64,000 nucleotides of DNA from Mobula hypostoma (lineage: Eukaryota): contig NC_086103.1 in assembly GCF_963921235.1 (NCBI RefSeq), positions 135,718,001 to 135,782,000 on the forward strand, read 5' to 3'. The notes below the pieces were generated by a model. It had not been told where the DNA came from. It searched no databases and saw only the letters and a program-made list of their open reading frames with translations. The position numbers and the translations under genes are program-made. How positions within the stretch are numbered: the first letter of the stretch is position 1; every line of letters begins with the position of its first letter. Below are positions 1,046-44,815 of the stretch, piece by piece.

Positions 1046-1574
1046 ATGAAGGAGTTTGTTTTCTATGGCTCATTTTGTAGTACTCAACTTTGATTTATAA
1101 ATTGATTAGATAAGTTGTAGACTTTTCAGCACAGAAATAAATCTAGGATGTCGCTGCCATACATTACTCATGGAAGTGAATTTATTAATTTTTCATAAGA
1201 AATATCAAACACTTGATTCTCTCAGATATAGAAGTTCTTTCAGACAATTATTTCCTGGAGATCTAGCTGATGCTTATTGCATTGCTGTTAGTACTAAAAC
1301 TATTTATTGGTTGTTTACAGGTTGATATGAGCCATAAAATTCACTGTATTTCCTAAGTTGCCACAGTACTTCATTTGGGTACTTTAGGATATCCTGAATT
1401 ATGAAAGACTGTAAAACTGCAAGCTCTTTGTTTGTCCATGCTTGTTCATACTGAGCCACAGTTCCCTGCCTTTATCATCCAATTGAATCCACTCTCTGGT
1501 CACTCTGTCAGTACAAGGTTACATTTTGTTATGGTGAAACCTAATCCAAGTATCTGTGTGGGTTGTCTAATTCA

Positions 1575-2135
1575 TTGTTACTGATCTAATATTGAACTCA
1601 ATTGTTCCTATTCTAGAGTCTGGAATTCTAGGGATCTTGTTCTTATATATTTTTGGCTTTCACTTTGGTGTATTTTTTTTTTGTTCTTTTATTGCCAGAA
1701 TGTATTATTTCACAAGTTATCCACATTAAACACAACAACCACTTCTCTCTCCATTTTGCTAAATTCTATTAGTCTTCGTAAGATAGTGTTCAGTTTCTTT
1801 GTTATTTACCAAACCTTATACTTATGTATTGTCAGAAATTTTGACTTTTCTAAATCCATACATGAACAAGCATGAGTCCAGGTCTGACATTGTGTGGAGG
1901 CAGGGGAATATGTCACTTCCGTATAAGTAGGGCTTGACTTAAAAACCAGAAAAGTGGATAACTTGTGTAGACCTAGTTTTCCCTACCTTAGAAGACTATC
2001 TCAGTGTAGAGAAAGATCACCGGATTGATTCTGAGTACTGAGGGGGGATACTCAGTCCTATGAGGAGAATAAGCATACAGCCTTCTCTCTAGAGTTGAGA
2101 AGAATTGGAGCTTATTTCACTGAAGCATACAAAAT
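1575..2135 (+). repeat. Diverged direct duplicate of DYNC2H1 first-intron segment ~14320-14870
   Basis: Colinear shared blocks, e.g. caacaaccacttctctctccattttg, tattgtcagaaattttgactt, ggtctgacattgtgtggaggcag, actatctcagtgtag. Confidence 0.85.
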
Positions 2136-2436
2136 GGGGCACCATGATAGCATAGCGGTTAGCACGAGACTATCACAGCTCAGGGCTTCTGAGTTCAGAG
2201 TTCAATCTCTTCATCTCATGTTCTTTATATTTGTTGTTTATTTACTTATTATTATTATTAGTAGTAGTAGCAGTTTTTCTTTTGTATTTGCAATTTGTTG
2301 TCTTTGCATGTTGGTTGTTTGTCCACCCTGTGGACCCTGTTCATTGATTCTATTATGGTTCTTGTACTTACTGAGTATGCCTGCAAGAAAACATATCTAT
2401 AGTGACATATGTACTTCCATAATAAATTTACTTTGA
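2135..2436 (+). mobile_element. tRNA-derived SINE head with LINE-derived tail
   Basis: Head 'tagcatagcggttagcacgagactatcacagctc...gagttcagagttcaatc' matches SINE heads at ~32370 and ~36040. Tail 'aataaatttactttgaa' matches the Rex-like 3' UTR (reverse copy at ~12635). Confidence 0.6.
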
Positions 2437-2715
2437 ATGTGAATTCAAATATAGAATATATTACCACAGTATATATTAATATAAACAAAATGTTCATGAA
2501 TAGTGATTCATATGTTTTTTTCATTAAAACAATATAGTCTGAAAGTATCTATCGTGTTCATTTCTATTCCATTTAACACATGAAATGTGATCAATAATAC
2601 AATACAAACATTTTATTTATGTTTTGAAAGGAATTCTCCAACTCAGTGACGGGCAGAAGTTGCTGTAAGCAGTGGTGAAACAAGTAAAAGAGAACCTCAA
2701 ATGAATCTTTTTTCC
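2437..2715 (+). pseudogene. Decayed duplicate of DYNC2H1 coding exon 4 with upstream intron flank
   Basis: Aligns with ~44518-44790. Acceptor atttatgttttgaaag|gaattc is kept at 2630/2631, and gggcagaagttgctg(t/c)aagcagtggtgaaac is shared. A 13-nt deletion causes a frameshift. Confidence 0.85.
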
Positions 2716-2731
2716 AAACAGCATCCATATA

Positions 2732-3508
2732 CAGTGCACTCATCACATCAGGACAAGTACGTTTTGGTCCAATTAAGCAGCTGCTGCAATTAGCCAAAGT
2801 TTTATGGAAATAGTTTAAAAAGCAACAAATTATGTATTTAAATGGAATACAGAATAAATTAGAACAGTAACAAGACTATTAGAGAACTATAAAACTGTAT
2901 TAGTTGCTAATAGTTATCAACGGAGGAGTTCATTCAGTGTTCACTGATGTTCTTTGATTGACTATAAGTGAACAAAATGAATGCAGGCACCTAGTGCAGA
3001 TAGTGGACTGCTTTCAAACAGTGCTTTTGATGATTACATCTTCCAAATCTTCATTTTAATTGAAACATTCAAGATGATTGTCGATACCTTCAAAATTCTT
3101 CATAGTTTCTAATTGTTTCATTTTCACTCGGCTATTTTTGGTATCTCCAAGCCTGAATACTTGCAGTGAGCTTAAAAGTTCTGAATTGTCTTATTGCTCA
3201 TTTGTTTTCAACTACCAGTGACAAAAGAACATTGCTTTTTGAACACAAATACATGCAACTGAAGCTATTTCAAAATTGTTTGCTCTCAGCACAGTGTAGT
3301 GTCTAACGGCCACACAAGTGATGGCACATGACTGATGCTAGTTGGAAACTGTTCAGCAACAGTCTCCTGGGTTAATTAAGCAGCATAATATCTCAAATAA
3401 ACAAAGGGAATCCTGGCTATTTTCTTGATTAGTTAATGTTCTTTAAGAGCTGTCCCAAATAAGTGGCTGGCCAGATTAAACAATGACCTGATTAATTGAA
3501 ATTCACTG
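2732..3508 (-). mobile_element. Non-autonomous Tigger/pogo deletion derivative (same family as 3982-6020)
   Basis: TA|CAGTG...CACTG|TA ends. The interior aligns to both ends of the TIGD element, with two internal deletions. Confidence 0.8.
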
Positions 3509-3981
3509 TATACCCAATGGATGTGCAGGCAGAACTGGGAACTCAATTTGCTTCAGCACAGTACAATAATAGATCACAAGTAATATATTTGCCAATATTA
3601 ACTGGTTCATTACAAACCTCAGAATTACCTGGAACCTTCCTTTACAATATAACTATTACTTGTACGGTGCTGCTGCTGCTGCTGCAAAAAAGCTAATGTT
3701 CATAGCATTTATGCCCTGTGCCTTACAGCAGTAAATTTGAAAAGTTTAACGTAGTACAAGTACAGATTTATGACATCAGTTATCGTAGCTAAGCTTCTTG
3801 TTTTTTTTTTTAGCTGTGTTCAGGAAATAACCCTCACCCATTCAAAAATTGTGCAGACCACTAGAAAATGAAACATTCCTAATTATAAAATGTAGTAAAT
3901 GTATATTCTGTTATAATGTGTTTAACCATAAACAATTATTGACCTAATTAAGTCAGGGGGCAAACTATTAAAATGGCAATA

Positions 3982-6020
3982 TAGTGGATTCTGGTTAATT
4001 GGGGCAGTACAGTTAGACAAATTAAGCTGGTTTCATGGAAATAGTTAAAAAGGTATAAAAAAGTCAAATGACTGTTTAACTGAATAACTAATTATATATT
4101 TAAATGAAATACAGAACAAATTAGAACACTAGCAATACTACTACAGTACAATAAAACTGTATTAGTTCCTAATAGTCATCGACGGAGAAATTCGTCCAGT
4201 GTATGCAGCCGTTTTCTTTTGATTGACTGTAAATGAACAAAATCAGCACAGACACTTAGTGCAGATAGTGGACTGCCTTCATTGCCTTCCTGCATGAAAT
4301 AGCGTTGTAATCCAACAATGAATTTCCTGGCATCCTGTGTAGTCACTAGCTCAGGTTCAGATGTGTCATCTTGATCACTTTCCTCATCTTCATATTTCCC
4401 ACCTTGGTTTATTGATACAATGCTTTCAACGATTGCATCCTCCAAATCTTCGTTTTCATTGTAACATTCAAGATGATTGTCGATAACTTCAAACTCGTCG
4501 TAGTTCCCAACCTGAAGGACTGAAATCGTTTCATTTTCACTCCCGGCCATTTCTGTCATCTCAAAGCCTGAATGCTTGAAACCGCAAAGAGCAAAACAGT
4601 TCTGAATTGTTTTACTGCTTATTTCTCGCCAACTATCAGTGACAAACTGTATTGCCTGTAAAAGGTTAACCCTTGCACACACTTCCTTGGCTGTTGCAGA
4701 AGATGTCAGTAGATTTTCTTCAATTGCTTCCAGAATGTGGTTCACCAATTTTCTGCGATACAGTGTCTTTAATTTTTTTATGATCCCCATGTCCATTGGC
4801 TGTACCAAGTATGTTCTACTGGCAGGCAGAAATTCCAGCTGAATGTTCTTCAAACATTCTACATTAGGGTATGCTGCACAATTGTCAAGAAGGAGAAGAA
4901 CTTTTCTTGATTTCCGCTGTAGCTCCATATCCCAACTCATCAGCCAATTCTTAAAAATGTCAGATGTCATCCATGCATTCTTATTAGCATAGTATTCGAT
5001 TGGTAAACTATCCATTCTTAGCCCCTTAAAGCACCGAGGCTTAACACTTTTTCCAATAACCAACAGTTTCTTTTTATCAGTCCCCGACATATTTGAACAA
5101 CACAAGACAGTTATGTGATCTATTGCTTTCTTTGTACCTGATAGTACGGCACGATAAAAAAGGCCCGTTTCGTCAGCATTGTAGATATCATCTGCACAAA
5201 AATTTTGAAGCAAATCTGGCAGTTTTGTAGATTTCCATGCCTCTGCATTTAAAGCATCAGAACCACTTTTCTCTCCATGTGTTTTCTTGAATTGAATGTG
5301 ATGCCTACACTTCCATCGAGATAACCAACCATCTGTTGCTTTAAAATCTCTGTGGCCCAGCTTCTTAGCCAACTCCTCTGATTTGTTTTTTAACATTGGT
5401 CCACTGACTCTCACACCTCGTCCGGTTACCACGGAAAACCATTGATTGAGGGCCTTTTCAACATCTGGGTTCTTACCTTCACGCTTTCGTTTTTGGGATG
5501 TTCCCTGCTGTCCCTCACATAATGCCCATTCTTCTCGCAGTTTATCTTGCTGTTGTATCAAGCGTGCAATTGTAGATTTTGGCACTCCAGTTATCACTGC
5601 CAGCTGACGATGGGTGGTGTTAGGCGGATGGCTTTTAATTTGGTCCAGTACCGTAATTTTTTCGGCCAGGGTCAAATCCTTTCTTGGCATCTTGGCAAGG
5701 GTCTGAAGTTTTTTAGACATTAAACAAAGAAAATGATCAAAAATCACTGCTTTTTGAATCAGCGTCCGTCGGCCCATTTAGATAACGCAAGGGCACACAA
5801 CTGAAGCTATTTAAAAACTATTCGCTCTAAGCACGGTGTAGTGTCTTAACAGCCACCATTGAACGCGACCGATGCTAGTTAGAAACTGTTCGGCAATCTG
5901 TCTCCTGTCCCAATTAATTGCTATAGTGCCCAAATAAACGAAGAGAGTTGCAGCTAATTTCTCGATTAAATTTTGTTATTGTCCCAGATATTAACCGATG
6001 GCCCAAATAACTGGAAATCT
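3982..6020 (-). mobile_element. Near full-length Tigger/pogo DNA transposon
   Basis: TA + TAGTGGATTCTGGTTAATTGGG at 3980-4003. The opposite TIR is degraded (GGCCCAAATAACTGGAAATC, 6000-6019). It encloses a transposase ORF. Confidence 0.8.
4176..5690 (-). CDS. Tigger transposable element-derived (TIGD4/6-like, CENP-B/pogo family) protein, ~504 aa from MPRKDL (open frame extends to 5777)
   Basis: N-terminal HTH (LTLAEKITVL...GVPKSTIARL), CENP-B HTH (VEKALNQWF...VSGPML...FKATDGWLSRWK) and DDE_1 domain (YNADETGLFY, LLLLDN, QPMDMG). No stops or frameshifts. The ATG sits in a gccaagATG context. Confidence 0.85.
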   Translation of the reverse strand: MPRKDLTLAEKITVLDQIKSHPPNTTHRQLAVITGVPKSTIARLIQQQDKLREEWALCEGQQGTSQKRKREGKNPDVEKALNQWFSVVTGRGVRVSGPMLKNKSEELAKKLGHRDFKATDGWLSRWKCRHHIQFKKTHGEKSGSDALNAEAWKSTKLPDLLQNFCADDIYNADETGLFYRAVLSGTKKAIDHITVLCCSNMSGTDKKKLLVIGKSVKPRCFKGLRMDSLPIEYYANKNAWMTSDIFKNWLMSWDMELQRKSRKVLLLLDNCAAYPNVECLKNIQLEFLPASRTYLVQPMDMGIIKKLKTLYRRKLVNHILEAIEENLLTSSATAKEVCARVNLLQAIQFVTDSWREISSKTIQNCFALCGFKHSGFEMTEMAGSENETISVLQVGNYDEFEVIDNHLECYNENEDLEDAIVESIVSINQGGKYEDEESDQDDTSEPELVTTQDARKFIVGLQRYFMQEGNEGSPLSALSVCADFVHLQSIKRKRLHTLDEFLRR

Positions 6021-7800
6021 TACCAGTCAATTGTTGGTGAGATATCGGATAGTCCTCCAGTATGAGTCAGTCTCACTAGAAAACATTACAATGAGATAGT
6101 GTTAAAGACGGCTATCTGTGTACAAACCCTTACCTATAATGATGAAACAACACCTACATGCTTAAACGAAAATATAAAATGTATTATACAAACTCTGGCC
6201 TAGTTACGTTTTCGTACTGAATGCTGCAGAACAAATCGTGAGCGGAGAAGCAGAAAGAAGAGACAAGAAAAATAACACAGACCTAATACGAATTTAAATT
6301 GATTCGCGAATAAGGCAATGGTTCATTTGACTGCTTTTGAGATAATAACTCACAGACCCTGAGAGCAATATTTTCCGTTTTATATATAAACGCGACAAAC
6401 AAAACAGTAGAATTCGACATGAATTCTCTGAAAGCTTCATCAGCAATCCCCAAAATACTGTTCAATCTTATGATAAACTCTATGATGTTGACTAACTGCA
6501 CAATTTGTAATTGGTGAAGAGAAGGCACTAGATCCCACCAGGAGCTGCCGCCGGAACGGACCTTTGACAAGCTGCATCCGCTCCAAATGAGAAGGGGCAC
6601 CGTTTTGGAATAAATTATCTCACATTCGGCGGCCACCCTGAATGAGTGCATGACCTAGATTCAGATCGGAAAACAAAGTTCCAATAAGATTTCGCTCTGC
6701 ATCGCTTCCAGGATGTTTAACCGAAGACTTAAAGCTCCAGCAGTTACTGGGCAACATAACTGACCCCCGACACGAACTTCCGAGTAGCCACCGGGCCACT
6801 CTAATACTGGACAAGAAAGGAGTGGGTTTCGGGCGTTTGGGGCCGGGTCTGACAAAGAAATCGCCTTTTCGCTACGTGATCCCATCGCGCAGCGGATACA
6901 CCCCTCCCCCATAACCAACACTCAGAGCAGACCACCGAGTGAGAGGGCGGGCTGGGCTGGCCCGGGCCGTGCCGGGCAGGGCAGTGAGAGGACATGACGA
7001 GGCTCCGAACCAGACGCTCTGCTGTCAGAACCCGACCCGCTGCCTCGGGGGAAGCATCGACTAACTCATCAGCCAAGAGGGGACATCCGGGCCGGAATCA
7101 TGGAAAGCAGCCGACGGAAGGATAGCGGGCGACAGCCAAACGGTGGGTCGGACGGTGAGATGGCTGCTGCACCTGTCACCCCGCCGCTCCGGGCAGCCGG
7201 GAACACGCGGCGTTTATCCGCTCCCCGCGTTGCCTCTACAGTTCGGTCTCGGCGACTCCAACACCGACACCGCGATCACTTCCGGGGCTGAGGGACAAGG
7301 TCGGCGCAGCCACTGCCCGACAGCGCGCACTGTAGGGGGAGCGAGGGTTGCAACCGGGGCGCTGCTGAGACAAGCGCATTGAGTGGCAGGCCTGACACAG
7401 CCTGCATTGACCCTGTAGACTGAAATAACCCACGGCAGCAGAGAGCGGCCGCTGGTAATTGTCACCCCGCTGCAAACAAATCACTGCCCAAGGGGAAGAC
7501 ATTTCCCCATCTGGGATGCCGCCGCCAAGCGCAGGTTTCGGGCTGAACTCGCGCCACAGGAGCGGAGTTGGAGCCCAGAGCGATATTATTCTGTACATCC
7601 GACCGTCACCACACGCGCTGACCAACAGCTGCAGCACTCCCGTCAGAGCGACTGCGAGTAGTTACCATGTATCGCGCCCCGCGGTCCCTTATCTCGCTCG
7701 CCGGGGAGGGGAGGGCAGCGCCGTCGCCGACTCCCCTCGCGGCCGCTGACAACAGAGCGCGTGGTTTATCGCGGCGCAATGACGTTCCCTTGCTCGGCGA

Positions 7801-7814
7801 TGCGTCACTTCCGC
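7801..7814 (-). promoter_or_regulatory. Overlapping ETS/CRE-half-site motif (GCGGAAGTGACGCA)
   Basis: tgcgtcacttccgc on +. A second ETS site (cacttccgg) is at ~7277 and a TGACGT at ~7780. Confidence 0.55.
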
Positions 7815-8016
7815 TCTGCTGGGCCGTTGCCGTGTGGGGTAACCGTGGACGCTGTTTGTTGCCAACCGGGCGGGCTTGTGCTGATCGCCCGGCCAGGCGC
7901 TCGTCCCGCCAGCTCCTGCCTCCCAGTTCGGCGAGCTCTGGAGTTAGTTACCACCCATAACGCGGTAGTGCGGAGATTTGCCCCGTGGGGACGCAGAACG
8001 TCATGGAAACGGCGGG
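7815..8016 (+). other. DYNC2H1: Candidate non-coding first exon of DYNC2H1 (boundaries uncertain)
   Basis: Donor-like GGG|gtaggt at 8017 near the island edge. The ATG exon at 15638 has its own acceptor (tttaag|gaaaaacaacATG), which implies an upstream UTR exon. Confidence 0.35.
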
Positions 8017-8971
8017 GTAGGTTAGCACTGAGCTCAAGGAGCTTCACCCACTGTGCTCAGCGATCCAACGGGGTCCTTTCTCCCGGGATTAGTGATGGGC
8101 TGTTGTGTTAACTTCAGTGGAGCTGAATACGCTTCACGTGCTTTAATGCCGGATATTTTACAGTCCGTTTCAGTAGTATAATGTTAAATTAAATCACAGA
8201 AAAGTTATAGCATGGATGGATTCAACTGTTTTACGCAACAAAAACCTGGTCTGTGGCCCATATCTATAGTCCTACTTTTCTTTGTATCTTTTCAGAATTG
8301 TGCCTTTTATTGCTTTTTCTCTTTCACAATATGTTTCTCAGTATTGTCTATCGATCCATTCCATCCGCGTTTTCTTTTTACTGGAAACAACGCTGTGGGT
8401 CAAGGAAGGAATATTTTTTGCCTATTTCGACACTTTGCTGATGCTACAGTCTATTCTTGCACTTGTCCAACCAATCCTACTTTTTGCTGCAAGTACTTGT
8501 CTTAGGTGTGCACGCAGAGTTTAATTCGTGCAAAGCTTTAACTTGGAGATGCGCCAGGACATGTATTTCTGTGTGACGTTTAAATGAAATGGCATTGGAA
8601 AATGCTTAGGAGCAGAGGGAGCTTAGAGCTGGATATATATTTCCAAAGAGTATGCAACATGAAAAATAAAAATAATTTTGACCAGGGTTGATAATACATA
8701 GCAGGTACCTGAGGAACAGACAGAGAAATATGATTAAAATTGTTATATAGTATTTGAGAAATTAAAATCTTCATACTAACTGTGAGTACCTTGGCATAAA
8801 AGAGTGGGATTTGGAAGTGGATTCCAGGAGAGATTTTTTGAAGTTGCATGTAGATAGACCGATGAGGGATGGAACATTACTGGACCCCGTCTCCGGGGAA
8901 TGTAGTAGGTCAGTTGAAGGGATTGTCTTGGGGGAGCATTACGGAGATGGTGACCATAACTCCATATATTT

Positions 8972-14285: not shown

Positions 14286-15647
14286 TCGCAAACCATATGT
14301 ACATATTTACATACTTCTTATTGTTATTGCTCTTATTTCAATGGTTCCATTTCTAGAGCTAGATTTCTTGGGATCTTGTTCTTATGATTTTTTTTTTTGC
14401 TTTTCCCTTTGGTGTATTTTTCCATTTTTTTTTGCCAGAATATTTTTCCTCATAAGTTATCCATATTAAACAACAACCACTTCTCTCTCCATTTTGTTAA
14501 CTTGTATTAGTGTTCAGTTTCCTTGCTATTTACCAAATCTGCTACTTCTGTATTGTCAGAAATTTTGACTTTGACCAAATCCAATTTATACATCAACAAA
14601 CAAATGGTCCAGGAGGTCTGACATTGTGTGGAGGCAGAGAAATGTGTCACTTCCATATAAGTAGGAATTCATTTAAAAACAAAAAAAAATTAATTACTTG
14701 TGCAGGCCTAGTCTTCCCTACTTAGAATACTATCTCAGTGTAGTGAGAGTTCATCAGATTGATTCAGAGTATCAAGGGGAAAGGCTTGTCCTACGATGAG
14801 AATATGCAGACTGAGCTTGCATTCCATAGTTGGAAGGATTGGAGATGATTTCATTGAAATATGCAAAGTATACAATGACAGGACTCGACAGTGATATTGA
14901 TGCGGGGATATTGTACTCCCTGACTTAGGTCACAGTTTCAAAATAAAGGTTCAGCCGTTCTGTATTGAGATGAGAAGAAACTTCTTAACACAGAGGGCAG
15001 TAGTCATAGGAGTTTTGTAGCCAAGGGGACTGTATATGTTCAAGACCAACATTTATAGATTCTTGGATGTTAAAGGAATTAAGGCATGTTGATTTTTACA
15101 GGAAAATGATGCTGAAGTAAAAGATCAGCTATGATCTTTTACTAAATGACAGAGCAAGTTTGAGGGGTCAAATGACTTGCCTCTTCTGCAGCTAAAATAT
15201 AATAAGAATTGAAATTGAAATTTATTACTATATGATATTTTATTATTTAATTTCCTTCAAGATTAGTTATGGATAAATTATGTGCTGCAGAACTCCAGTG
15301 AGGTCTTCATTGTAATATTTTTGCATTTAGTGGTTCCTTGAATACAATATTATTTCTAACTTGTTGAATGTGACTGATTAAGATCTCTTGAGGTTTAATT
15401 TCTAAGGGTCTTTTATTGTTGACCTTGGGCCTGCATTTCACAATTCTGAAATTCATTTCTGTTTGCATAAGAATAGTACTGGTTGTAATAAATTAGCATG
15501 TCTTTGAAGTATTTTTGTTGGAGTGAAAACTCAGGATGTATGCATTCTGGTTGATCTTTTATTTTTCTGTGCATTGTGTTATAAGCAATAAAATTTGTAC
15601 TTTGGCACTTAAAATTTTTTTAAAATATCTATTTAAGGAAAAACAAC

Positions 15648-15842
15648 ATGTCTGCAAATCTAGAAGATACAAGAAAATGTTTCATCCTCAGAACAGCAGG
15701 AAATTATTTTGGCATTGCCCCATCGGATTCTTTCATTTCATCACTGGGAGACAGGAAAGAATTGAACAATTTTCTGGATGATGGCAATGTGTTTGTTATC
15801 TCGTTGCAGAAATTGGGTGACCAGCTCGTTGTGTGTAATAAG
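15648..15842 (+). CDS. DYNC2H1: DYNC2H1 coding exon 1 (exon starts ~15638)
   Basis: MSANLEDTRKCFILRTAGNYFG...ELNNFLDDGN...CNK matches the recalled dynein-2 heavy chain N-terminus. 195 nt; donor AAG|gtatca. Confidence 0.92.
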
Positions 15843-30009: not shown

Positions 30010-30846
30010 CAGTGGATTCGGGATAATTGGGCTATCAGTTACTTAAGACAGCTGCTTATTTGGGACAACTCTTAAAGAGCAAAAGCAAATCAGGAAAATA
30101 GCCAGTTTCCCTTTGTTTATTTGGGACATTATGCTTCTTACTTGGGACAGGAGACTGTTGCTGAACATTATCTAACTAGCATCAGTTGTGTGCATATCGT
30201 GTGGTAGTTAGACAATACACCATGTTTAAAGTGAATAGTTTTTAAGTAGTATAACTTACATGTTTGTATTCAAAGAACAGTGTTTTATTGTCACTGATAG
30301 TTGACAAGTAATAAAAAAATAAGACAATTCAGAACTGTTTTGCTCATGCGGTTTTAAGCATTCAGGCTTGGAGATGCCAGAAATGGCTGGGAGTGAAAAT
30401 GAAACGATTTTACTACTTCAACGAGTTAGGAACTACAAAGAATTTGAAAGCTTCAACAATCATCTGGAATGTTACAGTGATAACAAAGATTTGGAGGATG
30501 CATCGTTGAAAGCACTGCTTGAAGGCAGTCTGCTTTATGCACTAGGTGTCTGCATTGATTGTCATTTACAGTCAATCAAAAGAACACATCAGTGTACACT
30601 GGATGAATTTCTCCTTCGATAACTATTAGGAACTAATACACTGCTTTATAGTACTATAGTAGTTTTGGTAGTTTTCTGATTTATTTTGTATTTTATTTAA
30701 ATGCTCAATTTGTTACTCATTTAAATGGTAGTTTGTCTTTCTTTATTTGCCTTTTTCATTATTTCCATGGATCTTTGGCTAATTGTGCAGCTGCTTAATT
30801 GGGCCAAAATTGGTCCCGATGTGCCCTAATTAATTAAAATCCATTG
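30010..30846 (+). mobile_element. Non-autonomous Tigger deletion derivative (same family as 2732-3508)
   Basis: TA|CAGTGGATTCGGGATAATTGGG start. ORF 30368-30622 matches the TIGD C-terminus (EMAGSENETI...NHLECY). Confidence 0.8.
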
Positions 30847-43580: not shown

Positions 43581-44696
43581 ATTCCATCGTCCACATCATT
43601 AATTATTCCCACTCTTTGCTTTCAACCTATCTTCTGCCATGCTACCATCTTTCCTGTAATACTGTGGGCTCTTACCTTGTTTAGAAGCCTCATATGCGAC
43701 ATCTTGTCAAAGGCCTTCTGAAAATGCAAGCAAATAACATCCACTGACTTGCCTTTGTCAATCCTGCTTATTACATCCTTAAAGAATTCCAACAGACTTG
43801 TCAGGAAACATTTGCACTTTAGGAACCCATGCTGACTTCGACTATTCTATCGTGTACCTCCAAGTACCCCAAAACCTCATTCTTAACACCATTTTACCAA
43901 CCACTGGCCTTTAATTTTCTGTCTTTTGGCTCCCTTCCGCCTTAAAGAGTGGAGTGAAATTGCAATTTTTCAGTCCTCCACAATCGAGTGAGACCTGAAA
44001 AATCACTACTGATGGCTCCACAATCTCATAAACTACCTCTTTCAGAACCCTGGGATGAAGGTGACATCTACTTTCAGACCTTTCAACTTCCCAAGCACTT
44101 TCTCCTTATTCATAGCAACTCTTCTCACTTCTTCCCCTTGATAGTCTCGATTTCTGGCATGCTGCAGGTGTGTTTTACACAGTAAAGATTGATGTAAGAG
44201 ACTTACTCAGTTCATCGGGTATTTTTTTGTTCCCCATTACTATCTCTCCAGCATCATTTTCCAGTGGTCTGATGTCTACTCTTGTCTGTCTTTTACTCTT
44301 TATATGTCTGAAAAATCTTTTGGCGTCCTCTTATATTATTGGCTAACTTATTTTCACAATTCATCTTTTCTTTCTTAGTTGCATTTTCATTTGCCTTCTG
44401 TTGACTTTTAATCACTTTCCACTAATTTTTGCTTTATTGTATGCCCTCTCCTTTGGTCTTATGTCTGCAGGGAAGAACCACAAATTGGTTTTCCAATTTT
44501 CCAATGCCCAACGTGATGGTGAATTCAAATTTAGGATTAATATGAAACAAAATCATAGTCACAAAAAATGAATTCACATTTATTTGTGGTTAAAATTATA
44601 TGGTCTGAAAGTCTCTAGCCTAGTGTCAGTTTCTAGTCTATTTAACCCATGTGAAATGTGACCATTAATACCATGCAAACATTTATGTTTTGAAAG

Positions 44697-44815
44697 GAAT
44701 TCTTGAACCCAGTGATGAATTTCAGTTCTGGGCAGAAGTTGCTGCAAGCAGTGGTGAAACAGCCAAAAGGGAAAGGGCTCAGCTTTTTCAAGAACTATTT
44801 AAACCAATTACACAG
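44697..44815 (+). CDS. DYNC2H1: DYNC2H1 coding exon 4
   Basis: (G)ILEPSDEFQFWAEVAASSGETAKRERAQLFQELFKPITQ; aag|GA...CAG|gtttgt. Confidence 0.95.

What the first reader, a model, noticed from the sequence alone, without database searches (positions are those of the whole stretch)
4176..7814. Candidate domesticated Tigger transposase gene, head-to-head with DYNC2H1 on a shared CpG island
Every other full-size TE coding region in the window is broken or truncated, but this 1.5-kb ORF is fully open. Its TIRs have decayed: the 5' TIR ends ...GGAAATCTTACC instead of ...AATCCACTG-TA. An open ORF with decayed TIRs is the expected signature of domestication, as in the TIGD/CENP-B/JRK family. On the - strand a plausible acceptor (ttttctttgtttaatgtctaaaaaacttcag|ACCCTTGCCAAGATG, 5703/5702) lies 12 nt before the ATG. 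Donor-like sites lie upstream (CTG|gtaaga ~6023, ATG|gtaact ~7666 in the island), so a spliced mRNA from the ciliary-dynein promoter is plausible. Such a protein would keep CENP-B-type HTH domains that could bind the TIRs of related MITEs (two copies in this window), a possible lineage-specific regulatory system.
Basis: partly seen in the sequence, partly recalled or inferred. Interest (0 to 1): 0.75.

Follow-up and report, generated by a model that had tools for sequence, protein, structure and literature searches.

The report
Ray-specific domesticated Tigger transposase gene
An old "jumping gene" enzyme next to the ciliary dynein gene DYNC2H1 has been kept intact, low in copy number and apparently expressed as a normal spliced host gene in manta/devil rays and stingrays, which adds a lineage-specific member to the known class of transposase-derived genes such as TIGD and CENP-B.

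Summary
Window 4179-5690 (- strand) is an open 504-codon pogo/Tigger transposase gene with two CENP-B-type HTH domains and DDE_1. It lies downstream of a true CpG island (6700-8100, GC 0.63, CpG o/e 0.94). The same island carries the non-coding first exon of DYNC2H1 (about 7820-8016, +); the DYNC2H1 ATG is in exon 2 at 15648.

The domestication reading is largely supported.
- Intact genes 95-99% identical in protein exist in Mobula birostris and Hypanus sabinus, as two old paralogs (A and B). One lies next to DYNC2H1, and each has several annotated isoforms.
- Contigs of four runs from four organisms break at these exon ends and cover exons far more deeply than introns.
- Adjacent non-coding DNA is about 60% conserved when translated, against 95% for the ORF. 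Same-family MITE copies and fossil DYNC2H1 duplicates in the window are only 74-84% identical.
- All ray copies share an 11-residue deletion next to the first catalytic Asp and a lost conserved His.
- The nearest non-ray relatives (64-68%) are arthropod, fluke and reedfish transposases, not TIGD4.

This is an independent, Myliobatiformes-restricted domestication and a new member of a known kind. No formal dN/dS could be run, and the function is inferred.

The parts
4176..5690 (-). Coding sequence of the Tigger-derived gene: 504 codons plus a TGA stop at 4176-4178. Two CENP-B-type HTH domains (aa 1-136), a KRKREGK basic patch, a DDE_1 core (D173, D269, D300), an acidic region and a conserved C-terminal helix.
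5691..5702 (-). The 12-nt 5' UTR part of the last exon, between the acceptor (cag|ACC at 5703/5702) and the ATG.
   Evidence: Sequence. The Hypanus isoform X1 reads ...NNRL|TLAKM across this junction. Contigs stop matching at 5703 and 5707.
5703..6023 (-). Intron made of the transposon's own 5' end: the decayed 5' TIR and the 5' UTR. The donor GTAAGA sits on the mutated TIR tip.
6024..6075 (-). Small non-coding exon 2 (acceptor ttttctag|T, donor CTG|gtaaga). It is homologous to residues 61-78 of the Hypanus 586-aa isoform and carries a TGA in that frame in the window.
6562..7800 (-). First exon or exons, 5' UTR, transcribed from the CpG island. A donor CAAAG|GTCCGT lies at 6562/6561, and an alternative Hypanus-type donor CAG|GTGCAG lies near 7165. 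The 5' limit is approximate.
   Evidence: X4 record 24 and X13 record 8 both stop matching at exactly 6562. X6 covers 6610-7633 and the 7625-7821 bin. One search gives the Hypanus homology at 7379-7119.
6700..8100 (.). CpG island acting as a bidirectional promoter (GC 0.63, CpG o/e 0.94).
7820..8016 (+). DYNC2H1 exon 1, in the 5' UTR. It has an upstream ATG at 8003 in frame with the main ATG, and the donor GGG|GTAGGT.
   Evidence: all four runs cover the 7822-8018 bin and none covers 8019-8215. X21 record 16 matches 7820-8017 and then runs on for 152 unmatched letters. Sequence.
15638..15842 (+). DYNC2H1 exon 2 with the start codon at 15648 (MSANLEDTRK...NNFLDDGN...).
3982..4003 (-). 3' terminal inverted repeat of the founding element, 21 of 22 bases matching the family end, followed by TA. 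It now lies inside the 3' UTR.
   Evidence: (loose-end consensus)
2814..3469 (-). Internally deleted copy (MITE) of the same Tigger family, in the same orientation and 74-82% identical to the ORF copy. It lies in the gene's 3' UTR.
1574..2694 (+). Fossil pieces of DYNC2H1 downstream of the gene, remnants of a segmental duplication: an intron-1 piece at 1574-2133 matches 14320-14867 (76.5%), and an exon-4 piece at 2475-2694 matches 44536-44773 (74.5%) with a broken frame.

Best explanation
A pogo/Tigger DNA transposon inserted about 1.8 kb from the DYNC2H1 transcription start, antisense to it, in an ancestor of the myliobatiform rays. It was then captured as a host gene.

How it is expressed. 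Antisense transcription from the bidirectional CpG-island promoter runs through one or two non-coding exons. It splices from a donor that arose on the mutated tip of the 5' TIR (6024/6023), or from 6562/6561, into an acceptor 12 nt before the transposase ATG. The element's own 5' end is therefore removed as an intron.

What happened next. The gene was duplicated together with the 5' part of DYNC2H1, giving paralogs A and B. Most of their length has since been homogenised by gene conversion.

What the protein most likely is. It is a nuclear, sequence-specific DNA-binding protein that uses the two CENP-B-type HTH domains, which are almost invariant among the rays. It keeps the transposase fold and the DDD triad. 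It has probably lost the ability to transpose, because of an 11-residue deletion in the loop after the first catalytic Asp, a His-to-Tyr change in DNCxxH, and a change in the PPNTTSL motif.

Shown: the gene, its conservation, low copy number, shared island, splice sites and coverage pattern.
Inferred: the loss of catalysis, the DNA targets (probably the TIR and subterminal motifs of the abundant MITEs of the same family) and any host role.
For: Identity and domains.

Orthologs and paralogs:
- The 90% cluster holds only M. birostris A and B, Hypanus A and B (plus an isoform) and the window protein.
- M. birostris A lies 2548 bp head-to-head from DYNC2H1. The window gene lies 9958 bp from the DYNC2H1 CDS start, which is in exon 2.
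- In Hypanus, A and B are in tandem 8.5 kb apart.
- Seven A-type residues are shared by M. birostris A and Hypanus A. All other variable sites are species-specific, which indicates gene conversion.

Splicing: the Hypanus 586-aa isoform maps to window 7379-7119, then 6077-6024, then 5702 onward.

Reads:
- Contig depth is 95-230 on the ORF, against 3-12 on 6123-6559 and 0 on 8019-8215 in all four runs.
- Contigs break at 6562, at 5703 and 5707, and at 8017.

Constraint:
- The ORF differs at 19-26 of 504 residues between genera and has no stop in five genes. The adjacent non-coding translation is 60% identical.
- Same-family MITEs are 74-84% identical and DYNC2H1 fossils 74-77%.
- Neutral simulation gives P(open) of 0.008 at d = 0.086 and below 0.001 at d = 0.2, counting substitutions only.
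- The listed differences in the unique part of the ORF are 5 synonymous and 3 non-synonymous.
- The first 162 residues are identical between the window protein and M. birostris A, which otherwise differ at 13 sites.

Ray-specific changes in motifs that all 22 non-ray homologs keep.

Independence from TIGD4: the ray clade has 100/100 support and sits among scorpion, bee, reedfish and fluke transposases.
Against: - No formal dN/dS was possible, because the DNA of the other assemblies could not be fetched and only 40 of about 700 read differences were listed.
- For the closest species pair, the nucleotide divergence of the ORF (about 1.5%) is no lower than that of the laid flanks (about 1.5-2%). 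All five amino-acid changes between the window protein and M. birostris B fall on the window lineage. Constraint in this species could therefore be relaxed.
- The runs are only guessed to be RNA. Depth comes from contigs, and no spliced joint was among the 15 joints shown.
- The DDD triad and the 3' TIR (21 of 22) are retained, so residual activity is not excluded.
- In the AF2 models the deleted segment lies in a low-confidence loop, not a core strand.
- The window copy is B-type, yet it sits where M. birostris has the A-type copy. This is unexplained.
Confidence: 0.75

Rival explanations
1. A stationary but still functional autonomous transposase. The copy cannot move itself because its 5' TIR tip is lost. 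Its protein still mobilises, or until recently mobilised, the abundant MITEs of the family. On this reading it is kept by selection on the transposon or by chance, not by a host function.
For: The DDD triad is intact and the RNase H-like fold is predicted. The 3' TIR is nearly intact. MITEs of the family are very abundant in the runs, with depth in the thousands on the MITE-shared segments.
Against: - MITE copies in the window are 16-26% diverged from each other and from this copy, so there is no sign of recent mobilisation.
- A copy fixed at one locus cannot be kept open for the Mobula-Hypanus time span by selection among transposing copies.
- All ray copies lack 11 residues and a His that all 22 non-ray homologs retain.
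Confidence: 0.1
2. A neutral relic. The ORF is open only because elasmobranch DNA evolves slowly and the species compared are close. The gene models are automatic annotation of a transposon copy, and the transcription is read-through from the CpG island.
For: ORF and flank divergence are similar (about 1.5-2%) between the window species and organisms B and H. At d = 0.015-0.02 an ORF stays open in 28-38% of neutral trials. Five residue changes are specific to the window lineage.
Against: - The comparison with Hypanus, a different family, is not close. The adjacent non-coding translation is 60% identical against 95% for the ORF.
- Organism E shows 5.0% divergence in the ORF against at least 8.6% in flanks that were filtered for 85% or more likeness.
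- Five genes in three species, in two paralogs older than the Mobula-Hypanus split, are all open.
- The neutral duplicates made with the gene are 74-77% identical, while A and B differ at 8-15 of 504 residues.
Confidence: 0.08
3. An ortholog of a known vertebrate TIGD gene (TIGD4 or TIGD6), as the automatic names suggest, rather than a new domestication.
For: NCBI names the ray proteins 'tigger transposable element-derived protein 4-like / 6-like'.
Against: - The closest non-ray proteins (64-68% identity) are scorpion, bee, reedfish and fluke copies. The coelacanth TIGD4-like protein is 36-41% identical and falls far outside the ray clade.
- No other chondrichthyan protein appears among the top 120 hits.
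- The survey of pogo-derived vertebrate genes lists 12 genes, none restricted to rays. It places the origin of TIGD4 in lobe-finned fishes (PMC7386202).
Confidence: 0.03

Closest known systems
Mammalian and vertebrate pogo/Tigger-derived genes (TIGD2-7, JRK, JRKL, CENPB, POGK, POGZ; Gao et al. 2020, PMC7386202)
   Same: The gene derives from a complete pogo-superfamily transposase. It keeps the CENP-B-type HTH domains and the DDE_1 domain, stays at one locus in low copy number and is conserved across species. Some of the known genes also keep the DDD triad (JRK, JRKL, POGZ).
   Different: It comes from an independent capture and is found so far only in Myliobatiformes (Mobula, Hypanus). It is much closer to arthropod, reedfish and fluke transposon copies than to any TIGD-like vertebrate protein. 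It is present as a gene-converting tandem pair. One TIR is still recognisable, which under that paper's screening rule (TIR on one side means transposon) would have excluded it.
CENP-B
   Same: The N-terminal two-HTH DNA-binding domain matches the solved CENP-B(1-129)-DNA structure by sequence (9e-11) and by fold.
   Different: CENP-B has an unrecognisable catalytic triad and an added dimerisation and acidic architecture. Nothing ties the ray protein to centromeres.
SETMAR / Metnase (mariner transposase captured by splicing onto a host gene)
   Same: The transposase ORF is brought under a host promoter by splicing into an acceptor just upstream of the transposase start. The catalytic-domain fold matches (3k9k, 3f2k).
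   Different: SETMAR is a coding fusion with a SET domain. Here the upstream exons are non-coding and the protein is the bare transposase. The promoter is the antisense side of the DYNC2H1 CpG island.
Autonomous Tigger/pogo transposons of arthropods, reedfish and flukes (P0002-P0011)
   Same: 64-70% protein identity over the full length, with the same domain order and C-terminal motif.
   Different: The ray genes lack the conserved TPDGSLxYKxx segment, the His of DNCxxH and the NTTS motif. They have a decayed 5' TIR, sit at a conserved locus and use host exons.

Membership tests
pogo/Tigger transposase-derived (domesticated) host genes | Descent from a pogo-superfamily transposase: CENP-B-type/Tc5 HTH domains plus DDE_1 | tested here: met
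   Pfam HTH_Tnp_Tc5 at 6e-16 and DDE_1 at 6.5e-46. 1hlv matches at 9e-11. Foldseek finds Mos1, SETMAR, CENP-B and Sleeping Beauty.
pogo/Tigger transposase-derived (domesticated) host genes | Stationary at an orthologous locus in several species | tested here: met
   There is a head-to-head DYNC2H1 neighbour both in the window genome and in M. birostris. The Hypanus upstream exons are homologous to window 7379-7119 and 6077-6024. Caveat: the A/B types do not correspond by position between the window genome and M. birostris.
pogo/Tigger transposase-derived (domesticated) host genes | Single or low copy number, not a family of near-identical copies | tested here: met
   The 90% cluster has 6 members, which are 2 genes per species plus isoforms. 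The next hit is 68% identical. No near-identical fragments were found. There is only one full copy in the 64 kb window. The genome itself could not be searched at the DNA level.
pogo/Tigger transposase-derived (domesticated) host genes | Purifying selection on the protein (Ka/Ks well below 1) | tested here: inconclusive
   The proxies point to constraint. Protein identity is 95% against 60% for the adjacent non-coding translation. All five genes are open, while the neutral P(open) is below 0.01. Listed differences are 5 synonymous and 3 non-synonymous. A codon-based test needs the orthologous DNA, which was not obtainable.
pogo/Tigger transposase-derived (domesticated) host genes | Loss of mobility: TIRs and TSDs lost or decayed | tested here: inconclusive
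   The 5' TIR has more than 3 mismatches in 22 and its tip is now a splice donor. The 3' TIR still matches in 21 of 22 bases and has a flanking TA.
pogo/Tigger transposase-derived (domesticated) host genes | Expression as a host mRNA from a host promoter | tested here: met
   The Hypanus isoform spans the island exons and both splice sites. M. birostris has several mRNA accessions per protein. The contig depth pattern and break points fit in four runs. The runs are labelled 'RNA?' by guess, not by record.
TIGD4 / TIGD6 orthologous groups | Closest relatives are the vertebrate TIGD4/6 proteins, forming one clade with them | tested here: not met
   The ray clade (100/100) groups with scorpion, bee, reedfish and fluke copies. 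The coelacanth TIGD4-like protein is distant at 36-41% identity. Tetrapod TIGD4/6 proteins themselves were not in the tree.
Active autonomous Tigger transposon | Two matching TIRs, conserved catalytic-core motifs, multiple young copies | tested here: not met
   The 5' TIR is decayed. All ray copies have the 11-aa deletion, the His-to-Tyr change and an altered NTTS motif, although DDD is kept. Other family copies in the window are 16-26% diverged deletion derivatives.

The most novel reading that the evidence does not exclude
The A/B pair encodes lineage-specific DNA-binding factors that still recognise the TIR and subterminal motifs of the thousands of same-family MITEs spread through ray genes. 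That would make a Myliobatiformes-specific regulatory network wired by one transposon family. Its expression would be tied to the ciliary dynein-2 gene through the shared bidirectional promoter.
Probability: 0.12. Interest if true: 0.65.

Novelty: new member of a known kind. Interest (0 to 1): 0.45.

Why it matters
- Published surveys list about a dozen pogo-derived host genes in vertebrates, none of them specific to cartilaginous fishes (PMC7386202). This adds an independent capture that is comparatively young and still legible.
- The founding element's 3' TIR, its MITE progeny, the promoter capture, the splice donor born on the 5' TIR tip and the segmental duplication with gene conversion can all still be read in the DNA.
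- That makes it a usable natural case for studying how a transposase turns into a host gene, and which changes (here a loop deletion beside the first catalytic Asp) accompany the loss of mobility.
- It does not change any general principle.

Tried and rejected
- Orthologous DNA for a codon-based dN/dS. The look-up of encoding contigs returned gene neighbourhoods but no DNA for all three assemblies, because the files were too large. One protein (P0124) was not on record.
- Ray fragments from run assemblies that would carry DNA. A search with residues 120-340 found only non-ray proteins at 77% identity or less.
- Direct spliced joints. The single read-laying run showed 15 of 977 joints, all of them MITE deletion forms. 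Splicing is therefore inferred from contig break points, not from listed joints.
- Copy number from depth. The runs behave like RNA and depth is given per contig, so this was not used.
- The repeat finder did not recover the TIR pair, because the 5' arm is too decayed. The ends were compared by alignment instead, and that alignment is rough.
- The 533-aa reading from the ATG at 5777 was rejected. That ATG lies in the intron and no ortholog has the extension.
- The Hypanus 82-aa N-terminal extension was rejected as coding. The same frame has stops in the window (ETEL*, NN*L), so it is 5' UTR.
- The idea that the 11-aa deletion removes a core beta strand was rejected. In AF2 models of both the ray protein and a transposon homolog it lies in a low-confidence loop between beta1 and beta2.
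Full report
**1. The observation**

The minus strand of window 4176-5777 is open. The conserved start is the ATG at 5690, which gives 504 codons and a TGA stop at 4176-4178. Every annotated ray homolog begins at MPRKDL.

Pfam finds HTH_Tnp_Tc5 and a full-length DDE_1 domain. The first 129 residues match the solved CENP-B DNA-binding domain. An AlphaFold model built on 26 sequences (mean pLDDT 71.6) shows two HTH bundles, an RNase H-like core and a long C-terminal helix. Foldseek returns Mos1, the SETMAR transposase domain, the CENP-B DBD and Sleeping Beauty.

The region 6700-8100 is a true CpG island, with GC 0.63 and CpG o/e 0.94. Neighbouring DNA has CpG o/e of 0.19-0.56.

**2. The founding transposon**

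The 3' end of the element is still recognisable. Window 3982-4003 matches the family end (...CCAGAATCCACTG, then TA) in 21 of 22 bases. That family end was taken from the loose-end consensus of many family copies in the reads.

The 5' end is decayed beyond 3 mismatches in 22. Its tip now reads CTG|GTAAGATTTCC, which is a consensus splice donor.

Two internally deleted copies of the family lie at 2814-3469 and 30049-30769. They are 74-84% identical to the ORF copy and 76% identical to each other. The family is therefore old. The segments shared with these MITEs have contig depths in the thousands, so the MITEs are very abundant.

**3. Relatives**

The only close proteins in 5.8 billion clusters are from Mobula birostris and Hypanus sabinus. 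The next hit is 68% identical and comes from a scorpion, followed by a bee, the reedfish, a fluke and unnamed contigs.

The 90% cluster has six members:
- M. birostris P0001 (505 aa, called type A here) and P0121 (504 aa, type B);
- Hypanus P0125 (A), P0124 (B) and P0122 (a 586-aa isoform of B);
- the window's own protein P0123, from assembly GCA_963921235.1.

Variable sites:
- Seven residues between positions 345 and 428 separate A from B in both genera, so the duplication predates the Mobula-Hypanus split.
- All other variable sites are species-specific and shared by both paralogs of a species. This is the signature of gene conversion.

The window protein is B-type. It differs at 5 residues from M. 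birostris B and at 24-26 residues from the Hypanus proteins.

A maximum-likelihood tree gives the ray clade 100/100 support. It is nested among scorpion, bee, reedfish and fluke transposases, with the coelacanth TIGD4-like protein far away. The automatic names '4-like' and '6-like' therefore do not indicate orthology.

The survey of pogo-derived vertebrate genes lists twelve genes, none of them ray-specific (PMC7386202).

**4. Synteny and the duplication**

- In M. birostris, type A lies head-to-head with a 4313-aa DYNC2H1, 2548 bp from its CDS start.
- In the window genome, the DYNC2H1 CDS starts 9958 bp from the ATG. That places it at 15648, where exon 2 opens with MSANLEDTRK...NNFLDDGN behind an acceptor.
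- In Hypanus, A is followed 8.5 kb downstream by B on the same strand.
- Downstream of the window gene lie decayed copies of a DYNC2H1 intron-1 piece (1574-2133, 76.5% identical to 14320-14867) and of exon 4 (2475-2694, 74.5% identical to 44536-44773, frame broken). An earlier first-reader note, s1-144036, led me to these.

This fits a tandem segmental duplication of the unit [Tigger gene - island - DYNC2H1 exons 1-4].

One point is unexplained. By position the window copy should correspond to M. birostris A, yet it carries the B signature. Reads of the window species show a minor A-type base at 4409 (56 of 175), so an A-type copy probably lies outside the window.

**5. Transcription and splicing**

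The Hypanus 586-aa isoform has an 82-residue extension. It maps to window 7379-7119 (60% identity) and 6077-6024, and then continues from 5702. This requires:
- an exon of 6075-6024 (acceptor ttttctag|T, donor CTG|gtaaga);
- the acceptor cag|ACC at 5703/5702, 12 nt before the ATG.

In the window that upstream frame contains stops, so these exons are 5' UTR.

The single read-laying run used four runs of four organisms. The runs are labelled 'RNA?' by guess, but their depth pattern is that of RNA:

| Region | Contig depth |
|---|---|
| ORF | 95-230 |
| 3' flank 3405-3873 | 42-66 |
| 6123-6559 | 3-12 |
| 6562-7202 | 22-52 |
| 7822-8018 | 5-12, in all four runs |
| 8019-8215 | 0, in all four runs |

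Contigs stop matching the genome at these points:
- At exactly 6562 in two organisms, with 140 and 30 further letters. The site reads CAAAG|GTCCGT.
- At 5703 and at 5707. The latter contig has 64 further letters.
- At 8017, with 152 further letters. The site reads GGG|GTAGGT, and the extra G is shared with the first base of exon 2.

I read these break points as exon ends. On that reading the Tigger gene and DYNC2H1 start back to back at about 7700-7820 on one island. No spliced joint was among the 15 joints printed, so this remains indirect.

**6. Constraint**

A codon-based dN/dS could not be run, because no orthologous DNA could be fetched. The following proxies were used instead.

- (a) Between Hypanus and the window, the ORF is 95% identical in protein, while the adjacent translated 5' UTR is 60% identical.
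- (b) Organism E differs by 5.0% in the ORF (67 of 1333 bases). It differs by at least 8.6% in flanks that had already been filtered for 85% or more likeness.
- (c) Neutral simulation of this ORF, with substitutions only, keeps it open in 0.8% of trials at d = 0.086 and in none of 3000 trials at d = 0.2. The expected protein identity is 82% and 62% respectively. In fact five genes are open.
- (d) The neutral pieces apparently duplicated together with the gene are 74-77% identical. A and B differ at only 8-15 of 504 residues, and at 7-8 of 87 in the unconverted stretch.
- (e) The listed differences in the MITE-free part of the ORF are 5 synonymous and 3 non-synonymous.
- (f) The first 162 residues, which hold the DNA-binding domains, are identical between the window protein and M. 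birostris A. Those two proteins differ at 13 sites elsewhere.

Against this:
- For the closest pair of species, ORF and flank divergence are about equal (about 1.5-2%).
- All five differences from M. birostris B arose on the window lineage.
- One of those five, H192, is not seen in reads of the same species (99 of 106 read R). It may be a private allele or an assembly error.

**7. Changes in the catalytic core**

All 22 non-ray homologs in the alignment keep three features: a TPDGSLxYKxx segment right after the first catalytic Asp, the His of DNCxxH, and PPNTTSL. All ray genes lack the 11 residues, have Tyr in place of His, and read PASRTYL. D173, D269 and D300 are kept (DD30D).

In AF2 models of the ray protein and of a transposon homolog, the deleted segment lies in a low-confidence loop between beta1 and beta2. 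From my own knowledge of Mos1 and Sleeping Beauty, this is the place of the 'clamp loop', which holds the paired-end complex together. That equivalence was not tested here.

I infer that transposition competence has been lost while the fold and DNA binding are retained.

**8. Verdict**

This is a lineage-specific, Myliobatiformes-restricted domesticated pogo/Tigger transposase gene. It is one of a gene-converting pair and is driven by the antisense side of the DYNC2H1 CpG island. It is a new member of a known kind. The regulatory-network idea is untested.

Noticed in passing
window 1574-2133 and 2475-2694: Decayed duplicates of a DYNC2H1 intron-1 piece and of exon 4 (frame broken) lie just downstream of the Tigger gene on the + strand. 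This implies an old tandem duplication of the unit [Tigger gene - island - DYNC2H1 5' part]. They appear to lie within the gene's long 3' UTR.
   Followed up: partly
window 4179-5690 versus M. birostris and Hypanus loci: The window copy carries the B-type residue signature, but it occupies the DYNC2H1-adjacent position that the A-type copy holds in M. birostris. Possible causes are gene conversion, exchange, or an assembly or annotation difference.
   Followed up: partly
window 5116: The assembly has T (His192). Contigs of the same species read C (Arg192, 99 of 106 depth), and all other ray proteins have Arg. This is a private allele or an assembly error.
   Followed up: no
window 8003-8016: DYNC2H1 exon 1 contains an ATG which, after splicing to exon 2, is in frame with the main start at 15648 and would add 8 residues (METAGKNN). 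This may explain why the annotated CDS start differs between the two Mobula assemblies.
   Followed up: no
window 2814-3469 and 30049-30769: These are internally deleted Tigger copies (MITEs) of the same family. Recurrent deletion junctions appear in the reads (for example 4245 to 5726, and 4280 to 4415), and depth on the shared segments runs into the thousands. The MITE family is therefore very abundant and widely transcribed.
   Followed up: partly
window 5313-5683: Low-depth contigs of the window species are 10-13% diverged from the 5' part of the ORF (X4 records 21 and 22). They indicate further, older coding copies of the family elsewhere in the genome.
   Followed up: no
window 6562-7202: A contig of the window species differs from the assembly by 20 gapped positions and no substitutions inside the CpG island. 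This points to an indel polymorphism or a repeat-length difference.
   Followed up: no
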